DNA from: Salpingoeca rosetta
Lineage: Eukaryota; Protista; Choanoflagellata
DNA length: 64,000 nucleotides
Direction: 5' to 3'
Assembly: GCA_033442325.1 (NCBI GenBank)
Contig: JAWQFM010000031.1
Location: 257,745 to 321,744, forward strand
Position 1 is the stretch's first letter; each line of letters begins with the position of its first letter. This document shows positions 5,822-57,287 of the stretch, piece by piece. The notes under the pieces were generated by a model. That model searched no databases, had not been told where the DNA came from, and saw nothing but the letters and a program-made list of their open reading frames with translations. Both the position numbers and the translations under genes were made by a program.

Positions 5822-6273
5822 NNNNNNNNNNNNNNNNNNNNNNNNNNNNNNNNNNNNNNNNNNNNNNNNNNNNNNNNNNNNNNNNNNNNNNNNNNNNNNN
5901 NNNNNNNNNNNNNNNNNNNNNTTTATAACAACATATGAATTACAATATTCTCTCGTTTCCTGATCGTCTTTCCTCCCCAACTCGAACTGGTGTGTTTGTG
6001 GCTGCCTACGTTGTGGCCCGCCCTCTTACTGAATTCTTTTCCACTGTGCTTGCATCCATGTGCCGTCTATGGGTATGTGTGAGAGTGACAGCCTTACCCT
6101 CTATGCTCATGTGTGTTTTAGTTGGCCGGTGGGTGATCTGAGTATGCGAGATTGAGAACGCAACAGTTCGTGCACCGTGCGTGCGTCTCCCTCCGTCTGT
6201 TGTTCTTTGTGTGCGCCGCGTTTCCGCTTTCTTACACTCACACACACACACACTCTCTCACTGTCTCTGACTA

Positions 6274-8710: not shown

Positions 8711-9023
8711 NNNNNNNNNNNNNNNNNNNNNNNNNNNNNNNNNNNNNNNNNNNNNNNNNNNNNNNNNNNNNNNNNNNNNNNNNNNNNNNNNNNNNNNNNN
8801 NNNNNNNNNNNNNNNNNNNNNNNNNNNNNNNNNNNNNNNNNNNNNNNNNNNNNNNNNNNNNNNNNNNNNNNNNNNNNNNNNNNNNNNNNNNNNNNNNNNN
8901 NNNNNNNNNNNNNNNNNNNNNNNNNNCCATCACCTCAATTTTAAGCAACTGCGGTCCGGTATACTCCCCTACCCCCTTTAACGTCCCGATTAGAAGCCAA
9001 CAACTCAATTCCTCCTCCGGCAC

Positions 9024-41890: not shown

Positions 41891-41944
<54 letters not shown>

Positions 41945-44900
41945 ACATCCTCACCAAGCACCAACTATTTGTCCCATCCAACCAAAACATCACGCCGAAG
42001 GTTGATGAAGACTGTGACCTCGGCCACTTGTGCAAGCGGAGGTATTGTAAGCGTCGGCACCCACCACCGGTAAGTGTGGTCTTTCTCCTTCAGAAGCGTG
42101 AACAAAACGATGCTTGAGCGAGAAACTGACATCCTCCCACACGCACGCATACACACACGCTCATGCACACGTACGCTCACACGCGCACGCACGCACACGC
42201 GCATGCACACACACACACACACACACGCACGCAGATCTGCAAGCTCAGGCACATGTGCGAAAAGCGGGGTTGTTTTTTCTTGCATCCGATGGTCGACCTT
42301 CGGGACAGACCCAAGTGCTGGTTCTTGCAACAGGCTGGCGCACCATTATTGCAAGCAATCATTACGAACTTGACCGGAAACAACAGTATCACTACAGTTG
42401 CTGATGCACGCAGGCAGCAAGTTCATATTCGCGGCGGTACGGCGGAAGAGCGCGTCAAGGCTGCTGACTTGTGCAAAACAGTTTTCAACCTCGTATCATG
42501 CGTAAGATTTCCATTCCCTGGCCGCTCAAAGGAGGACCTCAAACGCAATCAGGCACCACTCCAGCTCGCAAAGCAGAATGACATCGCACTCTTCTACAGT
42601 GATGAGGAGGTCGTCATGGTGTACTGGGATGCAGTGCGGCGCCCACCTGAGGAGGTGCTGGCTGAAGTGAAGGAGCTGCTCATCGCGTCATCAGCCGAAC
42701 AGCGCGACCGTGAACACGTCCAAATCCGAGATGCACCCAAGAGCTTGTTTTTGCGCGACGCCGGTGCTTCTTGGCTTAGAGTGACCGTTGCAGCCGCTGC
42801 TCCCGACGTGGCTGTGTCCGTTGACCCACGAACTCAGCGTGTATTCATCAACGGAGGTACAGCTGCTGCTCGGAAACGCGCTGCTCAGGCTTGCAAAACA
42901 TTCGTCCGGCAGCTGGTCAAGTCTGAAGATGTGTTGCTGCCTGGCCTCTCCAAGGCCGACATCAAGCGCAATCAAGCTGCCAATGACTGTGCGAAGCAGT
43001 ATGACGTGACGCTGTTCGTCGGTGAGGCCAAGGCAACGCTCGTGTATTGCTCCACAAATCAGCGGTCTCTGGGTGCCCTGCCACGCATCAAGGAACTGCT
43101 GCAAACCCCAACTCAGCACCCGCCTCAGCACCCAGCAATTGTGACCCAAACTGTTACAGTCCCGAACGAACGCGCCCTTATCCCCGTGATTAAGGCTGTG
43201 CGACCCGCTCTCCCTGAGTATGTCTCCACGCAATTTCCCCAGACCAAGCTCAACATTGAGTTTCGGCACAGCGACCTCCCAGTTATGACGTTGAGCGGGC
43301 CCAGCACGCAAGTGGGCAGAGCTGCGGCAGCAATCACGGCGTTTTTAAAGGGTGTGGTCGTTCACAAGACGAGCGCCCCACACCCAGGTCCCACGGCGCA
43401 AGCTGCTCTGGAGAGGTTGCTGAAGGCAAAAGTCTCTCAGCTCAACACCAGATTCAAGCAAGGCAATCACAAGTCTGTGCAGCACAAGGGGTCGCCAGGC
43501 AAGAGCAAGAAGTCGCCACGTGTCTTGATTGCGTTCAACGTCGCTGAAACGAGAGTCATGCATTCGCTTCTGCGCGTGCACTTGACGGGCCCAACCGAAG
43601 CAAGCAAGGACCTCGAGCGGCTTTCCAAGACCGTGCAAGACTTTATTCATGACTTCACCTCCCAAACGATCTCAGCACCCAGCAAAGAACTGTATAACGC
43701 GCTCAAACCCGTCTTTCTCAAGCACAGCGTGGCCGCGCAATGGGTCGGCGACGACTGCAGCATTGTGCTGTCAGGAGCCAAGCAAAGCGTGAATACGGCC
43801 AGGCAACTCCTTCAACGTGACAATGGCAGCACTGGAACGCCTGGCGGACAGGCAAGTTGTGCTACGTCCCTTCCACCCACTCTTGGCAGCGGCGTATCTT
43901 CAAGCCCAACAACACGCAAACTCCTTGCGTCTACTAGCATCGTTGCCAGTGCTCTTCTGCTTCCCAAGAATGTTGGCCGCCTGAAGAGTTTGCTCGAGGA
44001 TGCGATTGGGGCCAATGCTGGAGTGCGGGCGGAGCCGTGCTTGCAGAATCAAGAGCCTTCGCGCGAGGTGGCCAGGCTGGTTGGCACAAAGGATGTGGTG
44101 GTGCCAGCACACAAGATGGCCGAGCAGAAGCTGCTGCAGCTGGAGCAAGACATGCTCACGGAGAACATCGAGCTCGACACGGCCGAGCTTGGCGTGTTCA
44201 AACGCCAGGAGGGGCGTGGCCTGATGAGGAGCGCACGTGACATGGGCGTCGTTGTGCTGAGCCCACGTGCCGCGCACAAGATGCTCGAGGCAGATATTCA
44301 CCAAGCATTATCACAGTGCACGGCAAAGGCAACCCGACCAGTCCACGTGCTGACAGCGAATATCTCCAGCTCTTCAAGGCCGGCTCAAGTTGACGTGGTG
44401 TGCGGGGATTTCAAGGGCATGCGCGTTGATGTCATTGTCAACGCCGCAAACGAGGATCTGATGCATGGTGGTGGCATTGCTTTGGCCATCGCCGAGGCCG
44501 CGGGTCTCCAGTTCTCGGACGAGTGCCAGAAGTCTGTGGCCGCGCACGGCCGCGTGCGTGCAGGCACAGCACGCCACACCTCGTCGGGTGACTTGGCCAA
44601 GTCGACGCAGATCAAGCACGTGCTGCACGCCGTGGCGCCAATTTACAGTGGTGACGGCGGCAGTGGTGGTGGCAAATCATTCTTGACGTCTGCCCTGGCT
44701 TCGCTGCCCAAGCTCGGGTTTGGCGGAGATACTCAGGCGCAACTGAGTGCGTCGCTGCGCGCGTGTGTGCAAGAGGCGATCCGGCTTGCTGGGCGCCTCC
44801 CTGATGTGAGCTCCATTGGCATCCCAGCGATTGGGTCTGGCGTGTTTGGATGGCCAGAAGCAGAGGCAACGCGGGAGATTGTCAAGGCGGTGGTGGCGTC

Positions 44901-46961
44901 GGTGAACAGCGGCAGCCTGGGCAACATCAAGCGCGTTGTGCTGTTTGACGCAATGCAAGCCAAGGCAAGCGCGTTTGCAGCGGCTGTGGGAACCTCTATG
45001 GCGCTTTGCGGACGCCGCGATGCGCAGATCAAGCACGTGCTGCACGCCGTGGCGCAATTTACAGTGGTGACGGCGGCAGTGGTGGTGGCAAATCATTCTT
45101 GACGTCTGCCCTGGCTTCGCTGCCCAAGCTCGGGTTTGGCGGAGATACTCAGGCGCAACTGAGTGCGTCGCTGCGCGCGTGTGTGCAAGAGGCGATCCGG
45201 CTTGCTGGGCGCCTCCCTGATGTGAGCTCCATTGGCATCCCAGCGATTGGGTCTGGCGTGTTTGGATGGCCAGAAGCAGAGGCAACGCGGGAGATTGTCA
45301 AGGCGGTGGTGGCGTCGGTGAACAGCGGCAGCCTGGGCAACATCAAGCGCGTTGTGCTGTTTGACGCAATGCAAGCCAAGGCAAGCGCGTTTGCAGCGGC
45401 TGTGAAGGCGCTTGCTGAGCGCGACGGTGCTGGCAGCAAGAGCAGCAGCAGCACGACCAGCAGCACGAGCACGACCAGCAGCAGTGCTTCGTACCATGTC
45501 CCACGTGTGCTGGAGAAGCCAGAGTACGTGTGGATGTGGCGGTTCCATGAGCGCGACCGGTGGGTGATGTATGACTGGGACCAGCAGGTGCAGATTGAGC
45601 AGGCACACGGGGCGGGTCGTCAAGATGACTTCCGCATCAGCGGTGACCGTGGCGGCGTTCGCTCTGATTCCAAGCACATTCCTGAGGGGGAGAAGTATCC
45701 CGTGTACTTTGTGAACCTGGCGAAGATGACACAGCGCAACGCCAAGTCCAACTTCGAGCGACGCATCCAACGTGTTCGCTGGACAGAAGGCATGCCGCTT
45801 CCGCCGCTGTTTGAGGAGCGGCGACAGGAGGCGCTTGCGCTCGCACAGGCGCAGCGCCGTGCACATCATTCGTCCTGGTTCTCCTTTGCCTCGACCACTT
45901 CATCGTCAGCGGCGCGACCGATGCCATCGAGTGGTATCAGCAACAGCGGCGGCAGCAACAACAGCGCGCGCATTGTGAATGTGCGCAAGCCAGAAATGGG
46001 AACACCGTACGTCACTGGCAAGGCGCCCAAGCCGTCGTCCATCACATCCACGGCAGCCCTGCCGAAGAAAGGCTTCGTGCTGTGTGGACCCAGGGCAAAG
46101 GTGCAGGCAGTGAAGGACAAGTGGACGAGCGAACTGCACGACATGTGGCAACAGTCGGAAATCAAGTTGTTTGAGAACGACCGCGAGCACAACGAGCGCC
46201 TTCTTGACCACAAGGATGTGCGTGCTGCCATTGCCAAGCACGGTGCCAAGATCCGCGTGAACCCTGCTGGCAACATTGTCCTCGAGTACGTGACTGAGTC
46301 TGCCTTCTATGAGATCAACAGCACGATGGTGAAGCTGGTCGAGGAGATCAAGGTGCCACGCACGTGGACGACGATGAAGGATCCTCGCAGCGTGGAGGTG
46401 GTGCCGGTGCCTGCAGGCACGCAGGAGTATCAGGACGTGGTGGAGATTTTCTTACGAGGCGGCTTCACGAAAACTGTGCTCAAGGTGGAGCGCGTGCAGA
46501 ACAAGTTCTTGTGGGATGCTTATTTCGACAAGCGCAGATGGCTGAATCGCCACAGTGGCGGCGCCAACGAGAAGCACATGTTCCACGGCACCCGTAGTGT
46601 TGAGCCGAACAAAATTGTCAAGGACAGCTTCGACTTTCGCCACGCGCGCGCGGGCATGTTTGGTCGCGGTGCCTATTTCGCCGAGTACATGTCTTACAGC
46701 GACAGCTATGCCTTTCCCGTGCAGCCCCCCACCATGAACCACTTCTCCTCGCGCTATGGCACCGGAGCAGGCGTGCGGCAGGTGTTCATTGCACGTGTGG
46801 CGGCCGGAAAAGTGGAAGAGCGATCGTCAGACAGCTCCATTGTTCGCCCTTCTGATGGGTACGATTCTGTTACAGGCACGGTGTCGGCCAATCACAAGGC
46901 CATCATCATCTACGACTTGCAGCAGGCCTACCCAGAGTACCTGATCACGTACAGCGCCTGA
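41449..46961 (+). CDS. Macro-PARP paralog A: 3 CCCH zinc fingers - KH-like repeats - macrodomain - WWE - PARP catalytic domain (internal duplication/frameshift at ~44989-45404)
   Basis: Exons 41449-41463 (tentative), 41578-41649, 42001-42069, 42235-46961. Macro: GDF..VDVIVNAANEDLMHGGGIA...IPAIGSGVFG. WWE: YVWMW...WVMYD...IEQAH...VNLAKMTQRN..S..RRIQR. PARP: VERVQN..LW..Y, MFHGT, FGRGAYFA, YS..YA, FIARV..G, DSV, AYPEYLITY. Confidence 0.88.
44606..45404 (+). repeat. Tandem direct duplication of ~383 bp (44606-44988 / 45023-45404) with 34-bp spacer inside the PARP-A macrodomain
   Basis: CGCAGATCAAGCACGTG...GCAGCGGCTGTG appears twice. The second copy lacks one C (GCGCAATTT vs GCGCCAATTT). Confidence 0.95.
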
Positions 46962-48147: not shown

Positions 48148-49097
48148 ATGCCTCCCCACCGAAAGGTAGGCAGATGCACATATGGTCCTCTGACTCTGGT
48201 TAGGATGCACGGCATCGTTTTGGTTTCGTGCCTCTCTTGAGCTGGCTTGTGGGGTGTCCGGACAACAGTTGTGTGTGTGTGTGTTGTCACATCAGGACAT
48301 CAGGACATCAGGACATCAGGACACATTGGACGTGCTACTGCTCATGCAGCCTTCTGACACGATGTTTGCTTTTTCTCTTCGTGTCTACGTGTCTGCGTGT
48401 CTGCGTGCAGGGTCAGCGTTGCCCACACGGCTCCAAGGCGGTCTGTCGGACAAGCGCGTGCTACTATGTCCACACAGATGAGGCAAGTCCCATCATGTGT
48501 GTATGCGTGTATGTGTGTGTGTGTGTTGCGTTGTGCAACAGGATGCGTGCGCAGAATGCGCATGGACTCTCCCGCATGTTTGTGAACGGCTCACCTGCCT
48601 GTCCCACTCATCTATTCATGCAATGCCGACATTCTGGTTCACAGAAGAACGTGGAGTGTGATTTTGGTTCAGGCTGCACGAATGCGTCCTGCCCCCGAGT
48701 GCACCCTGCGCCGGTGAGTGTTTCGTAGTGGCTTCCACACGATGGTGCATCTGTGTACGCCTTGGCTTGTCGCCAACAAAACATACCACCCTCTCTGCTT
48801 TGAGCCACACACAAGGACATACTCGGCTGTGAGGTTTTGGTGTGTCCTTGAGCGTTTTCATGTGTCGGCCGTTGTCACCGCCGCTTTGTTCTCATTTGCT
48901 TCTGACACCCGATGTGACACAGCTTAAGTTCCAGTGCCAGCGTGGACGGCACTGCTCGAGCTCCACCTGCGATCGCATCCACCCTGCGGCGAAAAAGGTT
49001 TGTTTACCTCTGCTCCCTGGCAGCGCCTGCGCACGAAACAAGACAGGCAGGGTTGTGCTCTGTGTGTGTGTGTGTGTGCGTGCGCGCGCGCGCACGC

Positions 49098-49161
<64 letters not shown>

Positions 49162-49891
49162 ATGTGAAGTGTTGAGCGTGCCAACACGTGCGTGAAACGC
49201 AGGTACGAAGCGTTCTTCTCACGCAGCCTCAAACCGCACCGACATCCACCCTTACCAGTCTCAAACGCTGTGCATCCATGACGAGAAATGCACCAACGCC
49301 TCCTGCCAGCGGCAGCATCCCAAGCGGGTACGCATGCGTGTATGTGTGTATGTGTGTGTGTGTGCATGTGCATGCGTGTATGTGTGTGCAGGCGTGCTTG
49401 TGCATGCGTGTGTGTGTGCGTGTGCGTTCGTTACCTTTGCGCCTTCGTGCATACGTGCTTGCCTGCTCCTGTGTAAACGTTGCGCAACCTGCTTCTTCAT
49501 TCTCAATTGTCTCTTGGTCACGCATGACACATGCGACGGTCTTGCTGTGACAACTTTCAGGATGCCATGCGCGCACAGCAACGGCCTCAGTCCATGTTTC
49601 CCCAGACCTCCACGTTTCCCAAAAGCCCGACCACACTTCCCAAGAGCCCCTCCATGTTTGGCAAAAGTCCTTCCAAGAGTCCCAGTTTTGGTCAGCATGC
49701 AACTCAGCCCTCTTTCTCTGTGCAGAATCAGCAGCAGCAACAGCACATGCTGCAGCCGCAGGTTCGTTTGCCTTTGCTTCCACGCACCAATAGCACGTTA
49801 TCTTAAGCTCTACGTCGCGAGAGAGAGTGTGTGTGTTCGTTCGTGGGTCTATTTCTGTGTGTGTGTGAGTTTGGGAGGAGCGCCCTCATGC

Positions 49892-49944
<53 letters not shown>

Positions 49945-50223
49945 GCACAAGGCGGCGCTCACGATTGTTCTGCGTGCCATGCTTGACAGAGCACCCCAGT
50001 GTGCTTCCAAGACCCCAACTGCACCAAGAAATTCTGTCCACGGCTTCATCCTCAGCGGGTATGTATGTGTGTGTGTGTGATATGGCTGGGGTGTGCGTTT
50101 GTACTGTGTATGTGTTGTTCGTGTGTGTGTGTGTGTGCGTGTGTGTGTGTGTGTGTGTGCCTGTATCCCTCTCTCTCACGCACCATGGGAATCCCAACAC
50201 ATCACCTCTCACCCCTCACCCAC

Positions 50224-50260
<37 letters not shown>

Positions 50261-53200
50261 TGTTGTTGCATTCACTTTCATAGGATGCCATGCGCGCACA
50301 GCCACAGCCTCAGCCCATGTTTCCCAAGAGCCCCTCCATGTTTGGCAAAAGTCCTTCCAAGAGCCCCAGTTTTGGTCAGCATGCAACTCAGCCCCCTTTC
50401 CCTGCGCAGCCGCCCAGGTTCTTCGGGGCACCTAGTGCCCCGACGCCTGACGGTGGTGTCACGAACGTCCCCACGCCCATACCTGGGAAGATGTACTATG
50501 TCAACACCTTTGGCAACGCCAAGCTGAGGGAAATTGCCGACGCCGTCAGCCAGGACATGTCCTGGACCATCGACAGGAAAAACCGGGCAATTGTGATCAC
50601 GGGCGCAACAATGGCTGAGCGCGAAGTGGTGAAGAACCAGTTCAAAAGCTTTCTCAAGCACAACCTCACTTGCGACCGCGTGGAAGTTGAGGGGTGCACG
50701 TTCGCTGAGCTCAAGGAAAACACGCAGGCACTCAACCTGGCCAAGCGCAGCAACATCATCATCTCCTACCATGATGGCGCCGTCGATCTCACGTACCAGG
50801 GCGACGATGGCGACGCTGTTGCCGTGCTGCCTCGGCTTGAGGCCGTGCTGCGTGCACAGGCCGTGACCACGCAGGTCGTGCCGCTGCCAAACAACGAGCG
50901 CGCCCTCATCTCTGTTGTTCGCGCCGCCACAACCGCGCTGGCCGACATGATTGCCAACCAGTTTCCCAACACCAAGTTCACTGTCGAGTTTCCTGGCCCG
51001 GTGATGACGGTGAGAGGCCCGGCGTCCAGCGTGCAAAGGGCGGCCAAACGCATCACAGCATACCTGCAGGACATCAAGGTGCTCAAGCGGAAGGCGAAGA
51101 AACCATCACGGCAGCTGGCACATGCGCTGTGTCATTTCCTGCGCCGTGCGGTTCGACAGATCAACGCAGACGCCACTGGCAACATGGACGGCGACACTGA
51201 GGCCCACGGCGAGGACGACGACGCCAGCGACGACAACGACGACGACCTTGGCGTCGGGCCTCCAAAGCCCACCAAGCCCAAGAAGCACGCGGCTGCGTCC
51301 GAGTCAGATGTGGAGTTCCCCTACATCCTCTTCAAGGTGTTCTCCAGCTTCTTCACCCACCCAACAGGCAAAGGCAAGGCAAGGGGCAAGGGCAAAGGGC
51401 CCGCGGGCGGCTCGAACAAGAACAGCGGCGGTGACAACGCTGACTTTGTCCGCGTCCAGCTGACAGGCCCTTCTGATGCGCGGAAGGACCTCGAGCGCCT
51501 GGCCCAGCGCGTCGACGCATTCATACAAACGTTTGTCAGCGCGTCTGTGCGCGTCAAGAAGGAGACGTTCAACACGATGAGGGCGTCGCTGCTCGAGCTC
51601 GACGTGAATGAGCACTATCGCGCGCACGACAAGACGCTTCTCCTGTCTGGGGCAGAGGCAGCGGTGGAGGAGGCAAAGAAGCGGCTGGACCAAGCTGAGC
51701 AGCGGCTTCGACCGCTCACGTACAAGCTGCATGCTTCGTCCAGCATCATGAGGATGGCCCTCCTCCTGCGGTGCAACTCCACAGCCCTCACACAGCTTCG
51801 CGATCAAGTGGCGCGTGCCTTTCCTGACGTGAACATCAGCATCCACAGTGGCGCGCAGGACGCCAAGAACCCTGGGTCGCGCGAGGTGGCCCGGTTGGTT
51901 GGCACAAAGGATGTGGTGGTGCCAGCACACAAGATGGCCGAGCAGAAGCTGCAGCAGCTGGAGCAAGACATGCTCACGGAGAACATCGAGCTCGACACGG
52001 CCGAGCTTGGCGTGTTCCAACGCCAGGAGGGGCGTGGCCTGATGAGGAACGCACGTGACATGGGCGTGGTCGTGCTGAGCCCACGTGACGCGCACAAGAT
52101 GCTTGAGGCAGACAGCAAGCAGGCTTCCAAGCACGCCGCCGCCTCAACTCCATCGACACCTGCCAAGGTCTCAACCCCTGCTGCAACCCCAGTTCTTATG
52201 GCCCACGTTGCTGGTGGGACCGACACTGCTATCGGGCTCAAAGTCCTGTGCGGGGATTTCAAGGGCATGCACGTTGATGCCATTGTCAACGCTGCAAACG
52301 AGGATCTGATGCATTGCGGTGGCATTGCTTTCGCCATCGCCAAGGCCGCGGGTCTCCAGTTCTCGGACGAGTGCCAGAAGTCTGTGGCCGCGCACGGCCG
52401 CGTGCGTGCAGGCACAGCACGCCACACCTCGTCGGGTGACTTGGCCAAGTCGACGCAGATCAAGCACGTGCTGCACGCCGTGGCGCCAATTTACAGTGGT
52501 GACGGCGGCAGTGGTGGTGGCAAATCAATGTTGTCGTCTTTCCTGGCTTCGCTGCCCAAGCTCGGGTTTGGCGGAGATACTCAGGCGCAACTGAGTGCGT
52601 CGCTGCGCGCGTGTGTGCAAGAGGCGATCCGGCTTGCTGGGCGCCTCCCTGATGTGAGCTCCATTGGCATCCCAGCGATTGGGTCTGGCGTGTTTGGATG
52701 GCCAGAAGCAGAGGCAACGCGGGAGATTGTCAAGGCGGTGGTGGCGTCGGTGAACAGCGGCAGCCTGGGCAACATCAAGCGCGTTGTGCTGTTTGACGCA
52801 ATGCAAGCCAAGGCAAGCGCGTTTGCAGCGGCTGTGAAGGCGCTTGCTGAGCGCGACGGTGCTGGCGGCAAGAGCAGCAGCAGCACGACCAGCAGCACGA
52901 GCACGACCAGCAGCAGTGCTTCGTACCATGTCCCACGTGTGCTGGAGAAGCCAGAGTACGTGTGGATGTGGCGGTTCCATGAGCGCGACCAGTGGGTGAT
53001 GTACGACTGGGACCAGCAGGTGCAGATTGAGCAGGCACACGGGGCGGGTCGTCAAGATGACTTCCGCATCAGCGGTGACCGTGGCGGCGTTCGCTCTGAT
53101 TCCAAGCACATTCCTGAGGGGGAGAAGTATCCCGTGTACTTTGTGAACCTTGGCAAGATGACGCAGCGCAACGCCAAGTCCAACTTTGAGCGACGAATCC

Positions 53201-54351
53201 AACGCGTTCGCTGGACAGAAGCCATGCCGCTTCCGCCGCTGTTTGAGGATCGGCGACAGGAGGCATTGGCGCTCGCACAGGCGCAGCAGCGTGCACAGCG
53301 CTCGCAGTCTTCATCATCGACGCACATGTCATCAGCCAAGGGCCAATCTGCATCGAGCAGCAGCAGCAGCAGCAGCAGCGCGCGCATTGTGAATGTGCGC
53401 GAACCCAAGGCTGTGAAGGAGGCGGAGACTGGCGGGAGCGTGCCCAAGCCGTCATCCATCACATCCACGGCAGCCCTGCCGAAGAAAGGCTTCGTGCTGT
53501 GTGGACCCAGGGCAAAGGTGCAGGCAGTGAAGGACAAGTGGACGAGCGAACTGCACGACATGTGGCAACAGTCGGAAATCAAGTTGTTTGAGAACGACCG
53601 CGAGCACAACGAGCGCCTTCTTGACCACAAGGATGTGCGTGCTGCCATTGCCAAGCACGGTGCCAAGATCCGCGTGAACCCTGCTGGCAACATTGTCCTC
53701 GAGTACGTGACTGAGTCTGCCTTCCATGAGATCAACAGCACGATGGTGAAGCTGGTCGAGGAGATCAAGGTGCCACGCACGTGGACGACGATGAAGGATC
53801 CTCGCAGCGTGGAGGTGGTACCGGTGCCTGCAGGCACGCAGGAGTATCAGGACGTGGTGGAGATCTTCTCACGAGGCGGCTTCACGAAAACTGTGCTCAA
53901 GGTGGAGCGCGTGCAGAACAAGTACTTGTGGGACTGCTACTTTCACAAGCGTGACGTGCTGAATCGTCACAGCATTGGCGCGAACGAAAAGCACATGTTC
54001 CACGGTACTGGCGCCGTTGATCCCGCCATCATCGCCGACACCAACTTTGACTTCCGCTATGCATCTGCCGGTTTGTTTGGCCGCGGTGCCTATTTCGCCG
54101 AGCTCATGGAATACAGCGACCGTGGCTACGCCTACGTGTGCCCTGACGACCCGACGAAACGACAGGTGTTCATTGCACGCGTGGCGGCTGGGAAGGTTGA
54201 GGAGCGCGGAAGCAACTGCGACCAGTCCATCAAGCACCAGTCTCCAGGGTTCGATTCTGTTGGGGGCATGGTCACGGCCACTCACAAGGCCATCATCATC
54301 TACGACTTGCAGCAGGCCTACCCAGAGTACCTGATCACGTACAGCGCCTGA
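48148..54351 (+). CDS. Macro-PARP paralog B: 5 CCCH zinc fingers - KSP-rich segments - KH-like repeats - macrodomain - WWE - PARP catalytic domain
   Basis: Phase-0 exons 48148-48165, 48411-48482, 48645-48713, 48923-48997, 49259-49327, 49561-49761, 49990-50058, then one 4-kb exon 50284-54351 (the 1353-aa ORF). Same macro/WWE/PARP motifs as paralog A, with an intact frame. Confidence 0.9.
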
Positions 54352-56365: not shown

Positions 56366-57287
56366 CACACACACGCACACACACACACAACACACGTATG
56401 CACGCACACACACACACACACACACANNNNNNNNNNNNNNNNNNNNNNNNNNNNNNNNNNNNNNNNNNNNNNNNNNNNNNNNNNNNNNNNNNNNNNNNNN
56501 NNNNNNNNNNNNNNNNNNNNNNNNNNAATCGTGCCTGCAATGGTGATTTGGCCATAGCCAGCAGGCACACACATACACACACACATGGGGAAGAAGCAGT
56601 GACTGTAAGGCCTCTTGACAAAACCACGAACACACGAGCAAACATTCACACGATCACACGCCACCCTAACACTACATGTCACTCCCAACCTTCGACGATG
56701 CTGAGGCGGAAGAGGGCTGCCAGGATGCTGCTCTTGCCAGCGCCAGTCCGCCCAACAATGCCAACCTGCAACGCGCGCAAACATCAGCAGCAGCAGAGTG
56801 AAAAAAGAGCGAAGAGCACATTGGGCGGGGTGAGATGAGACGTGTGCACGATGGAACGCTTGGGTGGGGTGTTCTCACACAGTTAATCGCGCTTGTGCAT
56901 GTACATTCACACAACCATACACACACACACACGCACACACACACGCATGCATGCACACACACACGCACAACCACACACACACACACGCATTCAGTACACC
57001 TTGGCGCCTGGGGCAATGCTGAGCGTGACGTCCTTCAATGCGTACGGAAGATTCTTGTCGTACTTGAGACTCATGTGCTGGTAGTGTTGTGTGAGCATGT
57101 GAAACTTACAGGGTGAGTTTTGGGGTAGGGTGTTGCGTTCTCAAAGCACATGTGCACATCACATGCAGTGAAACACCGTATGCACAAGAGAACTACATGC
57201 TGCATCTGCCATGCCACATGAAACAAGGAATCAACTCACATTCACTCGTGCATCCACACACATTCTTCGAAGCTTGTACTGTCTCAC

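What the first reader, a model, noticed from the sequence alone, without database searches (positions are those of the whole stretch)
48411..50058. One-finger-per-exon Nab2/ZC3H14-type (CX5CX4CX3H) array with copy-number difference between paralogs (3 vs 5)
Seen: B fingers are CPHGSKAVCRTSACYYVH, CDFGSGCTNASCPRVH, CQRGRHCSSSTCDRIH, CIHDEKCTNASCQRQH, CFQDPNCTKKFCPRLH, each on a 69-75 nt phase-0 exon. A fingers are CKFKTKSACHKAACGFIH, CDLGHLCKRRYCKRRH, CKLRHMCEKRGCFFLH. The first two finger exons have identical lengths in A and B (72 and 69 nt) but very different sequence, and finger 1 is CX7 in both. Established: CX5CX4-6CX3H spacing is the poly(A)-binding Nab2/ZC3H14 type, not the ZAP type. 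Inference: symmetrical exons allow shuffling or skipping to tune RNA or poly-ADP-ribose recognition.
Basis: partly seen in the sequence, partly recalled or inferred. Interest (0 to 1): 0.78.

Follow-up and report, generated by a model that had tools for sequence, protein, structure and literature searches.

The report
Nab2-type zinc fingers on choanoflagellate PARPs
Two neighbouring ADP-ribosyltransferase genes of the choanoflagellate Salpingoeca rosetta start with a string of small Nab2-like CCCH zinc fingers, most with a tiny in-frame exon each, and one gene has gained extra fingers by exon duplication, so this looks like an RNA-sensing front end that can change length.

Summary
The window is Salpingoeca rosetta. 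Gene A is PTSG_09729 and gene B is PTSG_09730. Both are tandem PARP14-like genes with CCCH fingers, KH-like modules, a macrodomain, a WWE domain and a mono-ART domain.

B1-B5 lie on 72/69/75/69/69-nt phase-0 exons. A1 and A2 lie on 72- and 69-nt exons. A3 opens the large exon. The strict CX5CX4CX3H motif occurs 6 times, against 0.045 expected by chance.

Two corrections:
- The NCBI model of B has four fingers. B5 and a 201-nt low-complexity exon sit intact inside its last 956-nt intron, so the count is 3 versus 4 or 5.
- A third gene on another scaffold has the same 72-nt, 69-nt and fused three-finger layout, followed by a KH-like module and an RBR-type E3 ligase tail. Three fingers therefore looks ancestral, and B expanded.

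The Nab2-type call is supported. A profile of the eight fingers hits only Nab2 chains significantly in the PDB (E 8e-11) and hits no ZAP chain. Pfam zf-CCCH_2 hits are subthreshold.

Poly(A) specificity is not supported. The duplicated fingers carry Arg where Nab2 has the adenine-stacking aromatic residue.

Gene B is expressed. Exon skipping and shuffling remain plausible but unproven.

Verdict: a new variant of a known kind, of moderate interest.

The parts
48148..48165 (+). Gene B (PTSG_09730) exon 1, 18 nt, six codons from the ATG, phase 0
   Evidence: matches the start of the NCBI model P0001. Donor is GT.
48411..48482 (+). B1 finger exon, 72 nt, C-X7-C-X4-C-X3-H, GC-AG intron downstream
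   Evidence: In the NCBI model. No Pfam hit on its own.
48645..48713 (+). B2 finger exon, 69 nt, C-X5-C-X4-C-X3-H
   Evidence: Pfam zf-CCCH_2 E 2.8e-4, 21.7 bits, below the cut-off. 19.5 bits in the own-genome scan.
48923..48997 (+). B3 finger exon, 75 nt, C-X5-C-X4-C-X3-H
   Evidence: In the NCBI model. No Pfam hit alone.
49259..49327 (+). B4 finger exon, 69 nt, C-X5-C-X4-C-X3-H; last finger of the reference model
   Evidence: Pfam zf-CCCH_2 E 0.011.
49561..49761 (+). Candidate cassette exon, 201 nt, phase 0, low-complexity P/S/Q-rich linker. About 97% identical over its alignable stretch after a 39-nt indel to the start of the large exon. Not in the reference model.
   Evidence: AG acceptor and GT donor are intact. 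It lies in the annotated 956-nt intron.
49990..50058 (+). B5 finger, candidate cassette exon, 69 nt, C-X5-C-X4-C-X3-H; not in the reference model
   Evidence: Pfam zf-CCCH_2 E 0.012. Its closest relative is B4, at 43% aa and 61% nt identity. All four ligands are kept (p about 0.024 if changes fell at random).
50284..54351 (+). Gene B large exon: low-complexity linker, KH-like modules, macrodomain, WWE, PARP catalytic domain, stop codon
   Evidence: Pfam Macro 1e-22, PARP 1.9e-12, WWE 3.4e-6. Best PDB hits are PARP14 and PARP15.
41380..41403 (+). Gene A (PTSG_09729) exon 1, 24 nt, phase 0
41578..41649 (+). A1 finger exon, 72 nt, C-X7-C-X4-C-X3-H
42001..42069 (+). A2 finger exon, 69 nt, C-X5-C-X4-C-X3-H
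   Evidence: Only weak Pfam hits, to zf-CCCH_tandem (0.0062) and zf-CCCH_10 (0.034).
42235..42303 (+). A3 finger at the 5' end of gene A's large exon; an intron lies before it and none after it
   Evidence: KH-like modules follow directly: AF2 mean pLDDT 78, with Foldseek matches to FMRP KH1-KH2 and Dim2p.

Best explanation
Positions 48411-50058 encode the N-terminal zinc-finger region of PTSG_09730. This is an expressed Salpingoeca rosetta gene for a PARP14-like mono-ADP-ribosyltransferase with fingers, KH-like modules, a macrodomain, a WWE domain and an ART domain.

Each finger is a knuckle of about 23 residues of the Nab2 class of CCCH fingers. In gene B each finger has its own 69-75-nt exon, in phase 0 at both ends.

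The ancestral layout is three fingers: a 72-nt exon with C-X7-C-X4-C-X3-H, a 69-nt exon with C-X5-C-X4-C-X3-H, and a third finger fused to the next exon. That layout is kept in the neighbour PTSG_09729 and in a third gene on another scaffold. Gene B replaced the fused finger by further copies of the 69-nt type (B3, B4, B5). The likely route (inferred) is unequal exchange in its microsatellite-filled introns. Every gain or loss stays in frame because the exons are symmetrical.

Four fingers are in the reference mRNA model. The fifth, together with a 201-nt linker exon, is intact in the last intron. It is either a cassette exon or a relic.

Inferred function: the finger string and the KH-like modules bind single-stranded RNA and bring the ADP-ribose writer, reader and eraser domains to an RNA or RNP target. 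Base preference is open. It need not be poly(A).
For: Identity and gene models.

Exon limits and phases.

Beyond chance.

Nab2 class: the profile hits only Nab2 chains significantly in the PDB, at E 8e-11. Pfam zf-CCCH_2 is the top family for B2, B4 and B5.

Third gene with the same exon pair and a fused third finger. Its KH-like module matches gene A (BLASTP 3e-5) and its tail matches RBR Rcat domains (CUL9 E 0.001, parkin 0.02-0.03). Only these three genes in the genome carry the module.

B4 and B5 are each other's nearest fingers, and the segment after each is about 97% identical.

Microsatellites lie in most introns of the finger region.

KH-like fold after the fingers.

Effector domains.

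Expression of PTSG_09730 in all eight RNA-seq conditions: Fairclough et al. 2013, Additional file 12.
Against: - No finger reaches Pfam's cut-off. The whole protein gives no CCCH family at all.
- The adenine-stacking aromatic residue after Cys3 is replaced by Arg in A2 and B2-B5 and by His in C2.
- AF2 gave the one finger it saw a pLDDT below 50.
- There is no transcript evidence for B5 or the linker exon. dN/dS for B4 vs B5 is about 0.7 over 23 codons, which is uninformative.
- No relative of the N-terminal region was found outside this genome, so conservation across species could not be used.
- RNA binding is inferred from family resemblance only.
Confidence: 0.7

Rival explanations
1. Gene B makes only a four-finger protein. 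B5 and the 201-nt linker segment are unused relics of an internal duplication, sitting in a long intron.
For: - The NCBI model, refined with RNA-seq by PASA/Inchworm (PMC4054682), splices B4 directly to 50284.
- dN/dS for B4 vs B5 is about 0.7, which is compatible with relaxed constraint.
- No protein fragment crossing a B5-to-large-exon junction is in the 5.8-billion-protein collection.
Against: - After 57% residue change, B5 keeps all four zinc ligands, the Thr after Cys2, the Arg after Cys3, the His-Pro, the exact 69-nt length and both splice signals. Ligand retention alone has p about 0.024.
- The annotated 956-nt intron is about three to six times the length of the gene's other introns, which are 162-261 nt.
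- The two acceptors are followed by nearly identical sequence, so short reads could have been assigned to either one.
Confidence: 0.45
2. The fingers are homologues of the ZAP/PARP12 N-terminal (NZAP) fingers, so these genes are orthologues of animal zinc-finger PARPs.
For: - The domain order is similar: CCCH fingers, then WWE, then ART.
- A2 has faint Pfam hits to zf-CCCH_tandem (0.0062) and to the ZAP-like zf-CCCH_10 (0.034).
- The catalytic domain hits PARP12 nearly as well as PARP15.
Against: - No ZAP chain is matched by the finger profile even at E 10, while Nab2 scores 8e-11.
- The fingers repeat every 23-25 residues, without the helices and sheet of NZAP.
- A macrodomain and KH-like modules point to the PARP14 branch.
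Confidence: 0.05
3. The fingers are real zinc knuckles, but their ligand is not RNA. It is poly-ADP-ribose, DNA or a protein partner.
For: - The Nab2 adenine-stacking aromatic residue is missing from most fingers.
- ZnF5 of ZAP works with WWE domains in PAR binding (PMC10450202).
- KH domains of PARP14 and DTX3L mediate protein contacts (PMC13224862).
Against: - The only significant structural relatives, the Nab2 fingers, bind single-stranded RNA.
- The fingers sit at the far N-terminus next to KH-like modules. About 900 residues separate them from the WWE domain in gene B's reference model.
- Arg can replace an aromatic residue in base stacking. This point is general knowledge and was not tested here.
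Confidence: 0.2
4. The CCCH strings are chance products of GT/CA-rich, Cys-codon-rich sequence, and the small exons are gene-prediction artefacts.
For: The window is full of (TG)n and (CA)n repeats. These translate to Cys/His-rich strings and give many spurious CCCH-like matches.
Against: - None of the eight fingers is low-complexity.
- The strict motif is more than 100-fold over the shuffled expectation.
- Splice sites, phases and NCBI models agree.
- A third locus repeats the same exon structure.
- The profile hits Nab2 at 8e-11.
Confidence: 0.02

Closest known systems
Nab2 / ZC3H14 tandem CCCH fingers (Pfam zf-CCCH_2, PF14608; PDB 2lhn, 5l2l, 4lj0, 3zj2)
   Same: - C-X5-C-X4-C-X3-H ligand spacing in six of the eight fingers.
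- Short beads-on-a-string repeat.
- The only significant PDB matches of the finger profile.
- zf-CCCH_2 is the best Pfam family for three fingers.
   Different: - These genes are not orthologues of Nab2 or ZC3H14. The host protein is a PARP.
- Single-finger scores are below Pfam's cut-off.
- Finger 1 has a C-X7 first spacer.
- Most fingers have Arg or His where Nab2 has the adenine-stacking aromatic residue after Cys3.
- In gene B each finger has its own symmetrical exon.
Animal zinc-finger PARPs (PARP12, PARP13/ZAP, PARP7)
   Same: CCCH fingers lie upstream of a WWE domain and an ART domain lacking a Glu at the third triad position. The presumed logic is the same: an RNA-binding front end on an ADP-ribosylation module.
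   Different: - The animal fingers form the compact NZAP and MZAP domains. No sequence similarity to them was found.
- The S. rosetta proteins also carry KH-like modules and a macrodomain, which PARP12, PARP13 and PARP7 lack.
PARP14 / PARP9 / DTX3L module sharing in vertebrates
   Same: - KH-type modules, macrodomain, WWE and ART; the best PDB hits are PARP14 and PARP15.
- Tandem duplicates sit side by side, as noted for PARP14-like genes in PMC4245714.
- The same N-terminal sensor module also heads an E3 ubiquitin ligase gene (gene C), as RRM and KH modules are shared by PARP14, PARP9 and DTX3L.
   Different: - The front end is CCCH fingers, not RRMs.
- There is one macrodomain, not three.
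- The E3 is RBR-like, not RING-DTC.
- The E3 gene is on another scaffold.
Entamoeba dispar PARG with a Nab2-type finger (reported in PMC4245714)
   Same: It is a precedent for Nab2-type CCCH fingers fused to an enzyme of ADP-ribose metabolism.
   Different: That enzyme is an eraser (PARG), not a transferase. I did not examine its sequence.

Membership tests
Nab2/ZC3H14-type CCCH finger (Pfam zf-CCCH_2) | Ligand spacing C-X5-C-X4-6-C-X3-H | tested here: met
   A2, A3 and B2-B5 are C-X5-C-X4-C-X3-H. A1 and B1 are C-X7-C-X4-C-X3-H, a variant first spacer.
Nab2/ZC3H14-type CCCH finger (Pfam zf-CCCH_2) | Score at or above Pfam's gathering threshold (25.8 bits) | tested here: not met
   Exon by exon: B2 21.7, B4 16.7 and B5 16.6 bits; no hit for B1, B3, A1, A2 or A3. 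The whole protein P0001 gives no CCCH family. No finger anywhere in this genome passes the cut-off in the six-frame scan; the best is 23.3 bits.
Nab2/ZC3H14-type CCCH finger (Pfam zf-CCCH_2) | Sequence similarity to structurally solved Nab2 fingers | tested here: met
   A profile of the eight fingers against the PDB gives Nab2 5l2l/2lhn E 8e-11 (three fingers aligned), 4lj0 1e-5 and 3zj2 1.4e-4. The next hits (MBNL, CPSF30) have E above 0.5.
Nab2/ZC3H14-type CCCH finger (Pfam zf-CCCH_2) | Basic and aromatic residues after Cys1 and an aromatic residue after Cys3, which sandwich adenine (PMC6371209) | tested here: inconclusive
   An aromatic residue after Cys3 is present in A1, A3 and B1 (and in C1 and C3). 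A2 and B2-B5 have Arg there and C2 has His. The basic-aromatic pair after Cys1 is present only in A1.
Nab2/ZC3H14-type CCCH finger (Pfam zf-CCCH_2) | Zinc-dependent binding of polyadenosine RNA | not testable with these tools
   This needs recombinant protein and binding assays.
ZAP/PARP12 NZAP fingers | Four CCCH fingers packed with extra helices and a sheet into one compact domain; sequence similarity to ZAP | tested here: not met
   No ZAP chain is matched at E up to 10. The 23-25-residue period leaves no extra elements. The NZAP description is from PMC10450202.
Clade 3 macro-PARP (PARP14/15-like) | Macrodomain, WWE domain and PARP catalytic domain in that order | tested here: met
   Pfam Macro 1e-22, WWE 3.4e-6 and PARP 1.9e-12, all above their cut-offs. 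The best PDB hits are PARP14 macrodomains and the PARP15/14/12 catalytic domains.
Clade 3 macro-PARP (PARP14/15-like) | H-Y-(non-Glu) catalytic triad of mono-ARTs | tested here: inconclusive
   The HGT and GxGxYFA motifs align with PARP15. The residue aligned with the Leu of PARP15's K-L-F-V-V-F strand is Ala, not Glu. That this Leu is the triad position is from memory.
Clade 3 macro-PARP (PARP14/15-like) | KH-type modules N-terminal to the macrodomain | tested here: met
   AF2 model of gene A residues after finger 3: mean pLDDT 78, with repeated beta-alpha modules. Foldseek matches at probability 1.00 to FMRP KH1-KH2, Dim2p and APE0754. Pfam KH_1 and KH_Vigilin hits are only faint, 0.03-0.05.

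The most novel reading that the evidence does not exclude
Choanoflagellates independently built a zinc-finger PARP system. A fast-evolving sensor cassette of Nab2-class fingers plus KH-like modules is plugged onto two kinds of effector: a macro-WWE-ART protein and an RBR E3 ligase. Its finger number is tuned by duplication or alternative inclusion of symmetrical one-finger exons. This would be a pre-animal analogue of the PARP14/PARP9/DTX3L and ZAP/PARP12 antiviral RNA-sensing axis.
Probability: 0.3. Interest if true: 0.72.

Novelty: new variant of a known kind. Interest (0 to 1): 0.5.

Why it matters
Animal antiviral PARPs join RNA-binding front ends to ADP-ribosylation modules. How old that design is, and how the sensors diversify, are open questions.

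In the closest unicellular relatives of animals, the same design is built with a different class of CCCH finger. Pfam finds no CCCH family on the whole protein, and the InterPro entries listed for the gene in the 2013 paper are only macro, WWE and PARP.

The gene structure, with one symmetrical exon per finger in gene B, shows a simple route by which finger number can change. The same cassette on an E3 ligase echoes the PARP14/PARP9/DTX3L partnership.

S. rosetta is genetically tractable, so binding specificity and function can be tested.

Tried and rejected
- Pfam on the full-length NCBI protein gave no CCCH family. Only exon-wise scans gave subthreshold zf-CCCH_2 hits.
- The protein-language-model atlas on residues 1-105 gave only leads scoring at most 0.86, to generic CCCH clusters. 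I did not use them as evidence.
- I searched for transcript-derived protein fragments crossing the acceptor at 50284, which would have shown whether B4 or B5 is spliced there. Nothing was found.
- An exhaustive HMMER search of gene A's finger 3 plus KH-like region against 1.84 billion representatives found only the paralogue P0001. Finger number across species could therefore not be compared.
- The two word-index searches with the large exons found only the genes themselves.
- A literature search for the locus tags found no main-text mention.
- A weak own-genome hit on contig C17 (L015) looked like a finger-1-type string. It lies in GC-rich sequence with no gene context, and I dismissed it as chance.
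- The top PF14608 hits elsewhere in the genome are ordinary C-X7-8-C-X4-5-C-X3-H fingers inside long exons, not Nab2-type arrays.
- dN/dS for B4 vs B5 is uninformative at 23 codons.
Fingers were searched exon by exon by reference, and the database proteins P0001 and P0002 were used as deposited. For that reason the four- or five-finger array as a whole was not folded.
- No contig looked human.
Full report
**What is there**

The window is from the choanoflagellate Salpingoeca rosetta. The large open exon at 50284-54351 is 100% identical to NCBI PTSG_09730 (P0001, 1456 aa). The one at 42235-45099 is identical to PTSG_09729 (P0002, 1615 aa). These are tandem, same-strand paralogues, which I call gene B and gene A.

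When I extend each to the nearest in-frame AG acceptor and GT/GC donor, the exons are as follows:
- B1 48411-48482, 72 nt, with a GC donor.
- B2 48645-48713, 69 nt.
- B3 48923-48997, 75 nt.
- B4 49259-49327, 69 nt.
- B5 49990-50058, 69 nt.
- A1 41578-41649, 72 nt.
- A2 42001-42069, 69 nt.
- A3 begins at an acceptor at 42235 and runs on into the large exon.

Every boundary is in phase 0. The deposited protein models reproduce the junctions for B1-B4 and A1-A3 residue for residue.

The strict motif C-X5-C-X4-C-X3-H occurs six times in the window, against a mean of 0.045 in block shuffles. The abundant (TG)n-derived Cys/His strings elsewhere in the window are a different thing.

**Two corrections to the observation**

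First, the reference model of gene B has four fingers, not five. It splices the B4 donor (49327) straight to 50284. B5 lies inside that annotated 956-nt intron, as does a 201-nt open phase-0 segment (49561-49761) with AG and GT signals. The gene's other introns are 162-261 nt.

The unit B4 + intron + linker segment is a tandem duplicate of B5 + intron + start of the large exon. The finger exons are old duplicates, at 43% aa and 61% nt identity. The segment after them is about 97% identical apart from a 39-nt indel, which suggests recent conversion or a recent partial duplication.

B5 keeps all four ligands, the His-Pro, the exact length and both splice signals. Ligand retention alone has p about 0.024 if the 13 residue changes fell at random. 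dN/dS for B4 vs B5 is about 0.7 on 23 codons and says nothing.

The two acceptors are followed by nearly the same 45 nt, so short reads could have been assigned to either. I could find no transcript-derived protein fragments to decide between them. The count is therefore 3 versus 4 (annotated) or 5 (potential).

Second, A3 has no exon of its own.

**A third member shows the ancestral layout**

I searched the whole genome with a profile of the eight fingers. Apart from the eight themselves, it found two more fingers on contig C23. That locus (L013) has:
- a 12-nt first exon;
- a 72-nt exon with a C-X7-C-X4-C-X3-H finger ending in the same four residues as B1;
- a 69-nt exon with a C-X5-C-X4-C-X3-H finger ending like B2;
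- a third finger (C-X4-C-X5-C-X3-H, with Phe-Phe after Cys3 as in A3) one codon into a large exon.

That exon continues with a module similar to gene A's (BLASTP 3e-5). It ends in a Cys-rich region that aligns with the Rcat domain of RBR ubiquitin ligases: CUL9 E 0.001, parkin 0.02-0.03, and Pfam IBR_1 5.8e-4, which is subthreshold.

Only these three genes in the genome carry the module. Gene A's fingers are closer to gene C's (58% and 52% aa) than to gene B's (33% and 39%). Yet A and B are about 80% identical over roughly their C-terminal 650 residues, with long near-identical stretches.

I read this as follows. Three fingers is the old state. Gene B lost the fused finger and multiplied the 69-nt type. 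The effector halves of A and B have been homogenised while the sensor halves diverged. Most introns in the finger region hold a long microsatellite, which is a plausible substrate for unequal exchange. That last point is inference.

**What kind of finger**

Scanned exon by exon, Pfam's best family is zf-CCCH_2, the Nab2 type, for three fingers: B2 (2.8e-4, 21.7 bits), B4 (0.011) and B5 (0.012). All are under the 25.8-bit cut-off, and the other five fingers have no zf-CCCH_2 hit. On the full protein, HMMER reports no CCCH family at all. The InterPro list in the 2013 paper has only macro, WWE and PARP. In a six-frame scan of the genome, no finger passes the zf-CCCH_2 cut-off and B2 ranks mid-table.

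The clearest test was a profile of the eight fingers against all PDB sequences. The only significant matches are Nab2: S. cerevisiae fingers 5-7 (5l2l and 2lhn) at E 8e-11 with three fingers aligned, and the Nab2 entries 4lj0 (1e-5) and 3zj2 (1.4e-4). After these come MBNL and CPSF30 at E above 0.5. No ZAP chain appears.

The 23-25-residue period also excludes the helix- and sheet-containing NZAP domain of PARP12 and PARP13.

The functional label does not follow automatically. Nab2 sandwiches adenine between an aromatic residue after Cys3 and a basic residue after Cys1 (PMC6371209). Here the aromatic residue is kept only in A1, A3 and B1 (and in C1 and C3). All the duplicated 69-75-nt fingers of B, and also A2, have Arg there, and C2 has His.

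**Context and likely mechanism**

Downstream of the fingers, the AF2 model is confident even with a three-sequence alignment (mean pLDDT 78). It shows repeated modules that Foldseek matches to tandem KH proteins such as FMRP KH1-KH2 and Dim2p, at probability 1.00. The single finger in that model was not resolved (pLDDT below 50).

[quoted passage not shown] Their best matches are PARP14 and PARP15, and there is no Glu at the position aligned with PARP15's triad Leu (the assignment of that Leu to the triad is from memory).

PTSG_09730 is expressed in all eight RNA-seq conditions of Fairclough et al. 2013, at about 5-26 units. Expression is higher in swimmers and rosettes than in attached cells (log2 ratio 1.68, P 1.9e-6).

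The best-supported reading is that the finger string and the KH-like modules form a single-stranded-RNA-binding front end that targets an ADP-ribose writer/reader/eraser module. The domain content, gene structure and expression are shown. RNA binding, base preference and any antiviral role are inferred.

**Comparison with what is known**

Perina et al. 2014 listed macro/RRM/WWE/PARP proteins in choanoflagellates and noted a Nab2-type finger on an Entamoeba PARG. They do not mention fingers on these PARPs. Reviews of PARP14 describe RRM and KH front ends and module sharing with PARP9 and DTX3L.

The S. rosetta genes are thus a new variant: the PARP14-like architecture with a Nab2-class finger array, and the same cassette on an RBR-type E3.

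No relative of the N-terminal region was found outside this genome in 1.84 billion representative proteins. Its age and any species-to-species variation in finger number are therefore unknown.

**Limits**

Fingers were handled exon by exon by reference, and the deposited proteins were used as they are. So the array as a whole was not folded, and the summed Pfam score of the array was not computed. No contig looked human.

Noticed in passing
L013:5086-7047 (+) = G000:C23:781085-783046: A third gene ('gene C') has the same three-finger front end: a 12-nt first exon, a 72-nt finger exon, a 69-nt finger exon, and a third finger at the start of a large exon. A KH-like module and a Cys-rich tail follow. 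The tail aligns with the catalytic Rcat domain of RBR E3 ligases (CUL9 E 0.001, parkin 0.02-0.03). The pairing of an ART with an E3 that share one sensor cassette recalls PARP14/PARP9/DTX3L.
   Followed up: partly
L013:7725-9305 (-), next to gene C: An open frame joins the C-lobe of a protein kinase (Pfam PK_Tyr_Ser-Thr 2e-6) to a PARP-catalytic-like region (Pfam PARP 8.9e-4, subthreshold). It may be a kinase-ART fusion, convergent with gene C.
   Followed up: no
window 44639-44938 and 45055-45354: Gene A contains a 300-nt direct repeat at 100% identity, with 416-nt spacing, that duplicates the C-terminal half of the macrodomain. The reading frame breaks between the copies, and the NCBI model bridges the break with a short intron. 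This is either a very recent duplication or an assembly artefact.
   Followed up: partly
window 42235-46961 vs 50284-54351: The paralogues are mosaic. Their C-terminal ~650 residues (macrodomain C-half, WWE, ART) are about 80% identical, with long near-identical stretches. The finger and KH-like region is only 30-48% identical. Gene A's fingers resemble those of the unlinked gene C more than those of its neighbour B. This suggests gene conversion of the effector half, or rapid divergence of the sensor half.
   Followed up: partly
window 41761-41940, 42138-42233, 49061-49160, 49332-49406, 49893-49942, 50062-50159, 50227-50258: Most introns between the finger exons carry a long microsatellite: (TCTC)n, (CACGCA)n, (TG)n or (AC)n. 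These could be substrates for unequal exchange that duplicates or deletes finger exons.
   Followed up: no
window 48483-48644: The intron after exon B1 has a GC donor (GAG|GCAAGT) rather than GT. It is the only non-GT donor among the introns of genes A, B and C that I examined.
   Followed up: no
window 5822-5921, 8711-8926, 33202-33599, 36442-36931, 38147-38246, 56427-56526: There are six assembly gaps (runs of N) in the window. None lies inside genes A or B.
   Followed up: no
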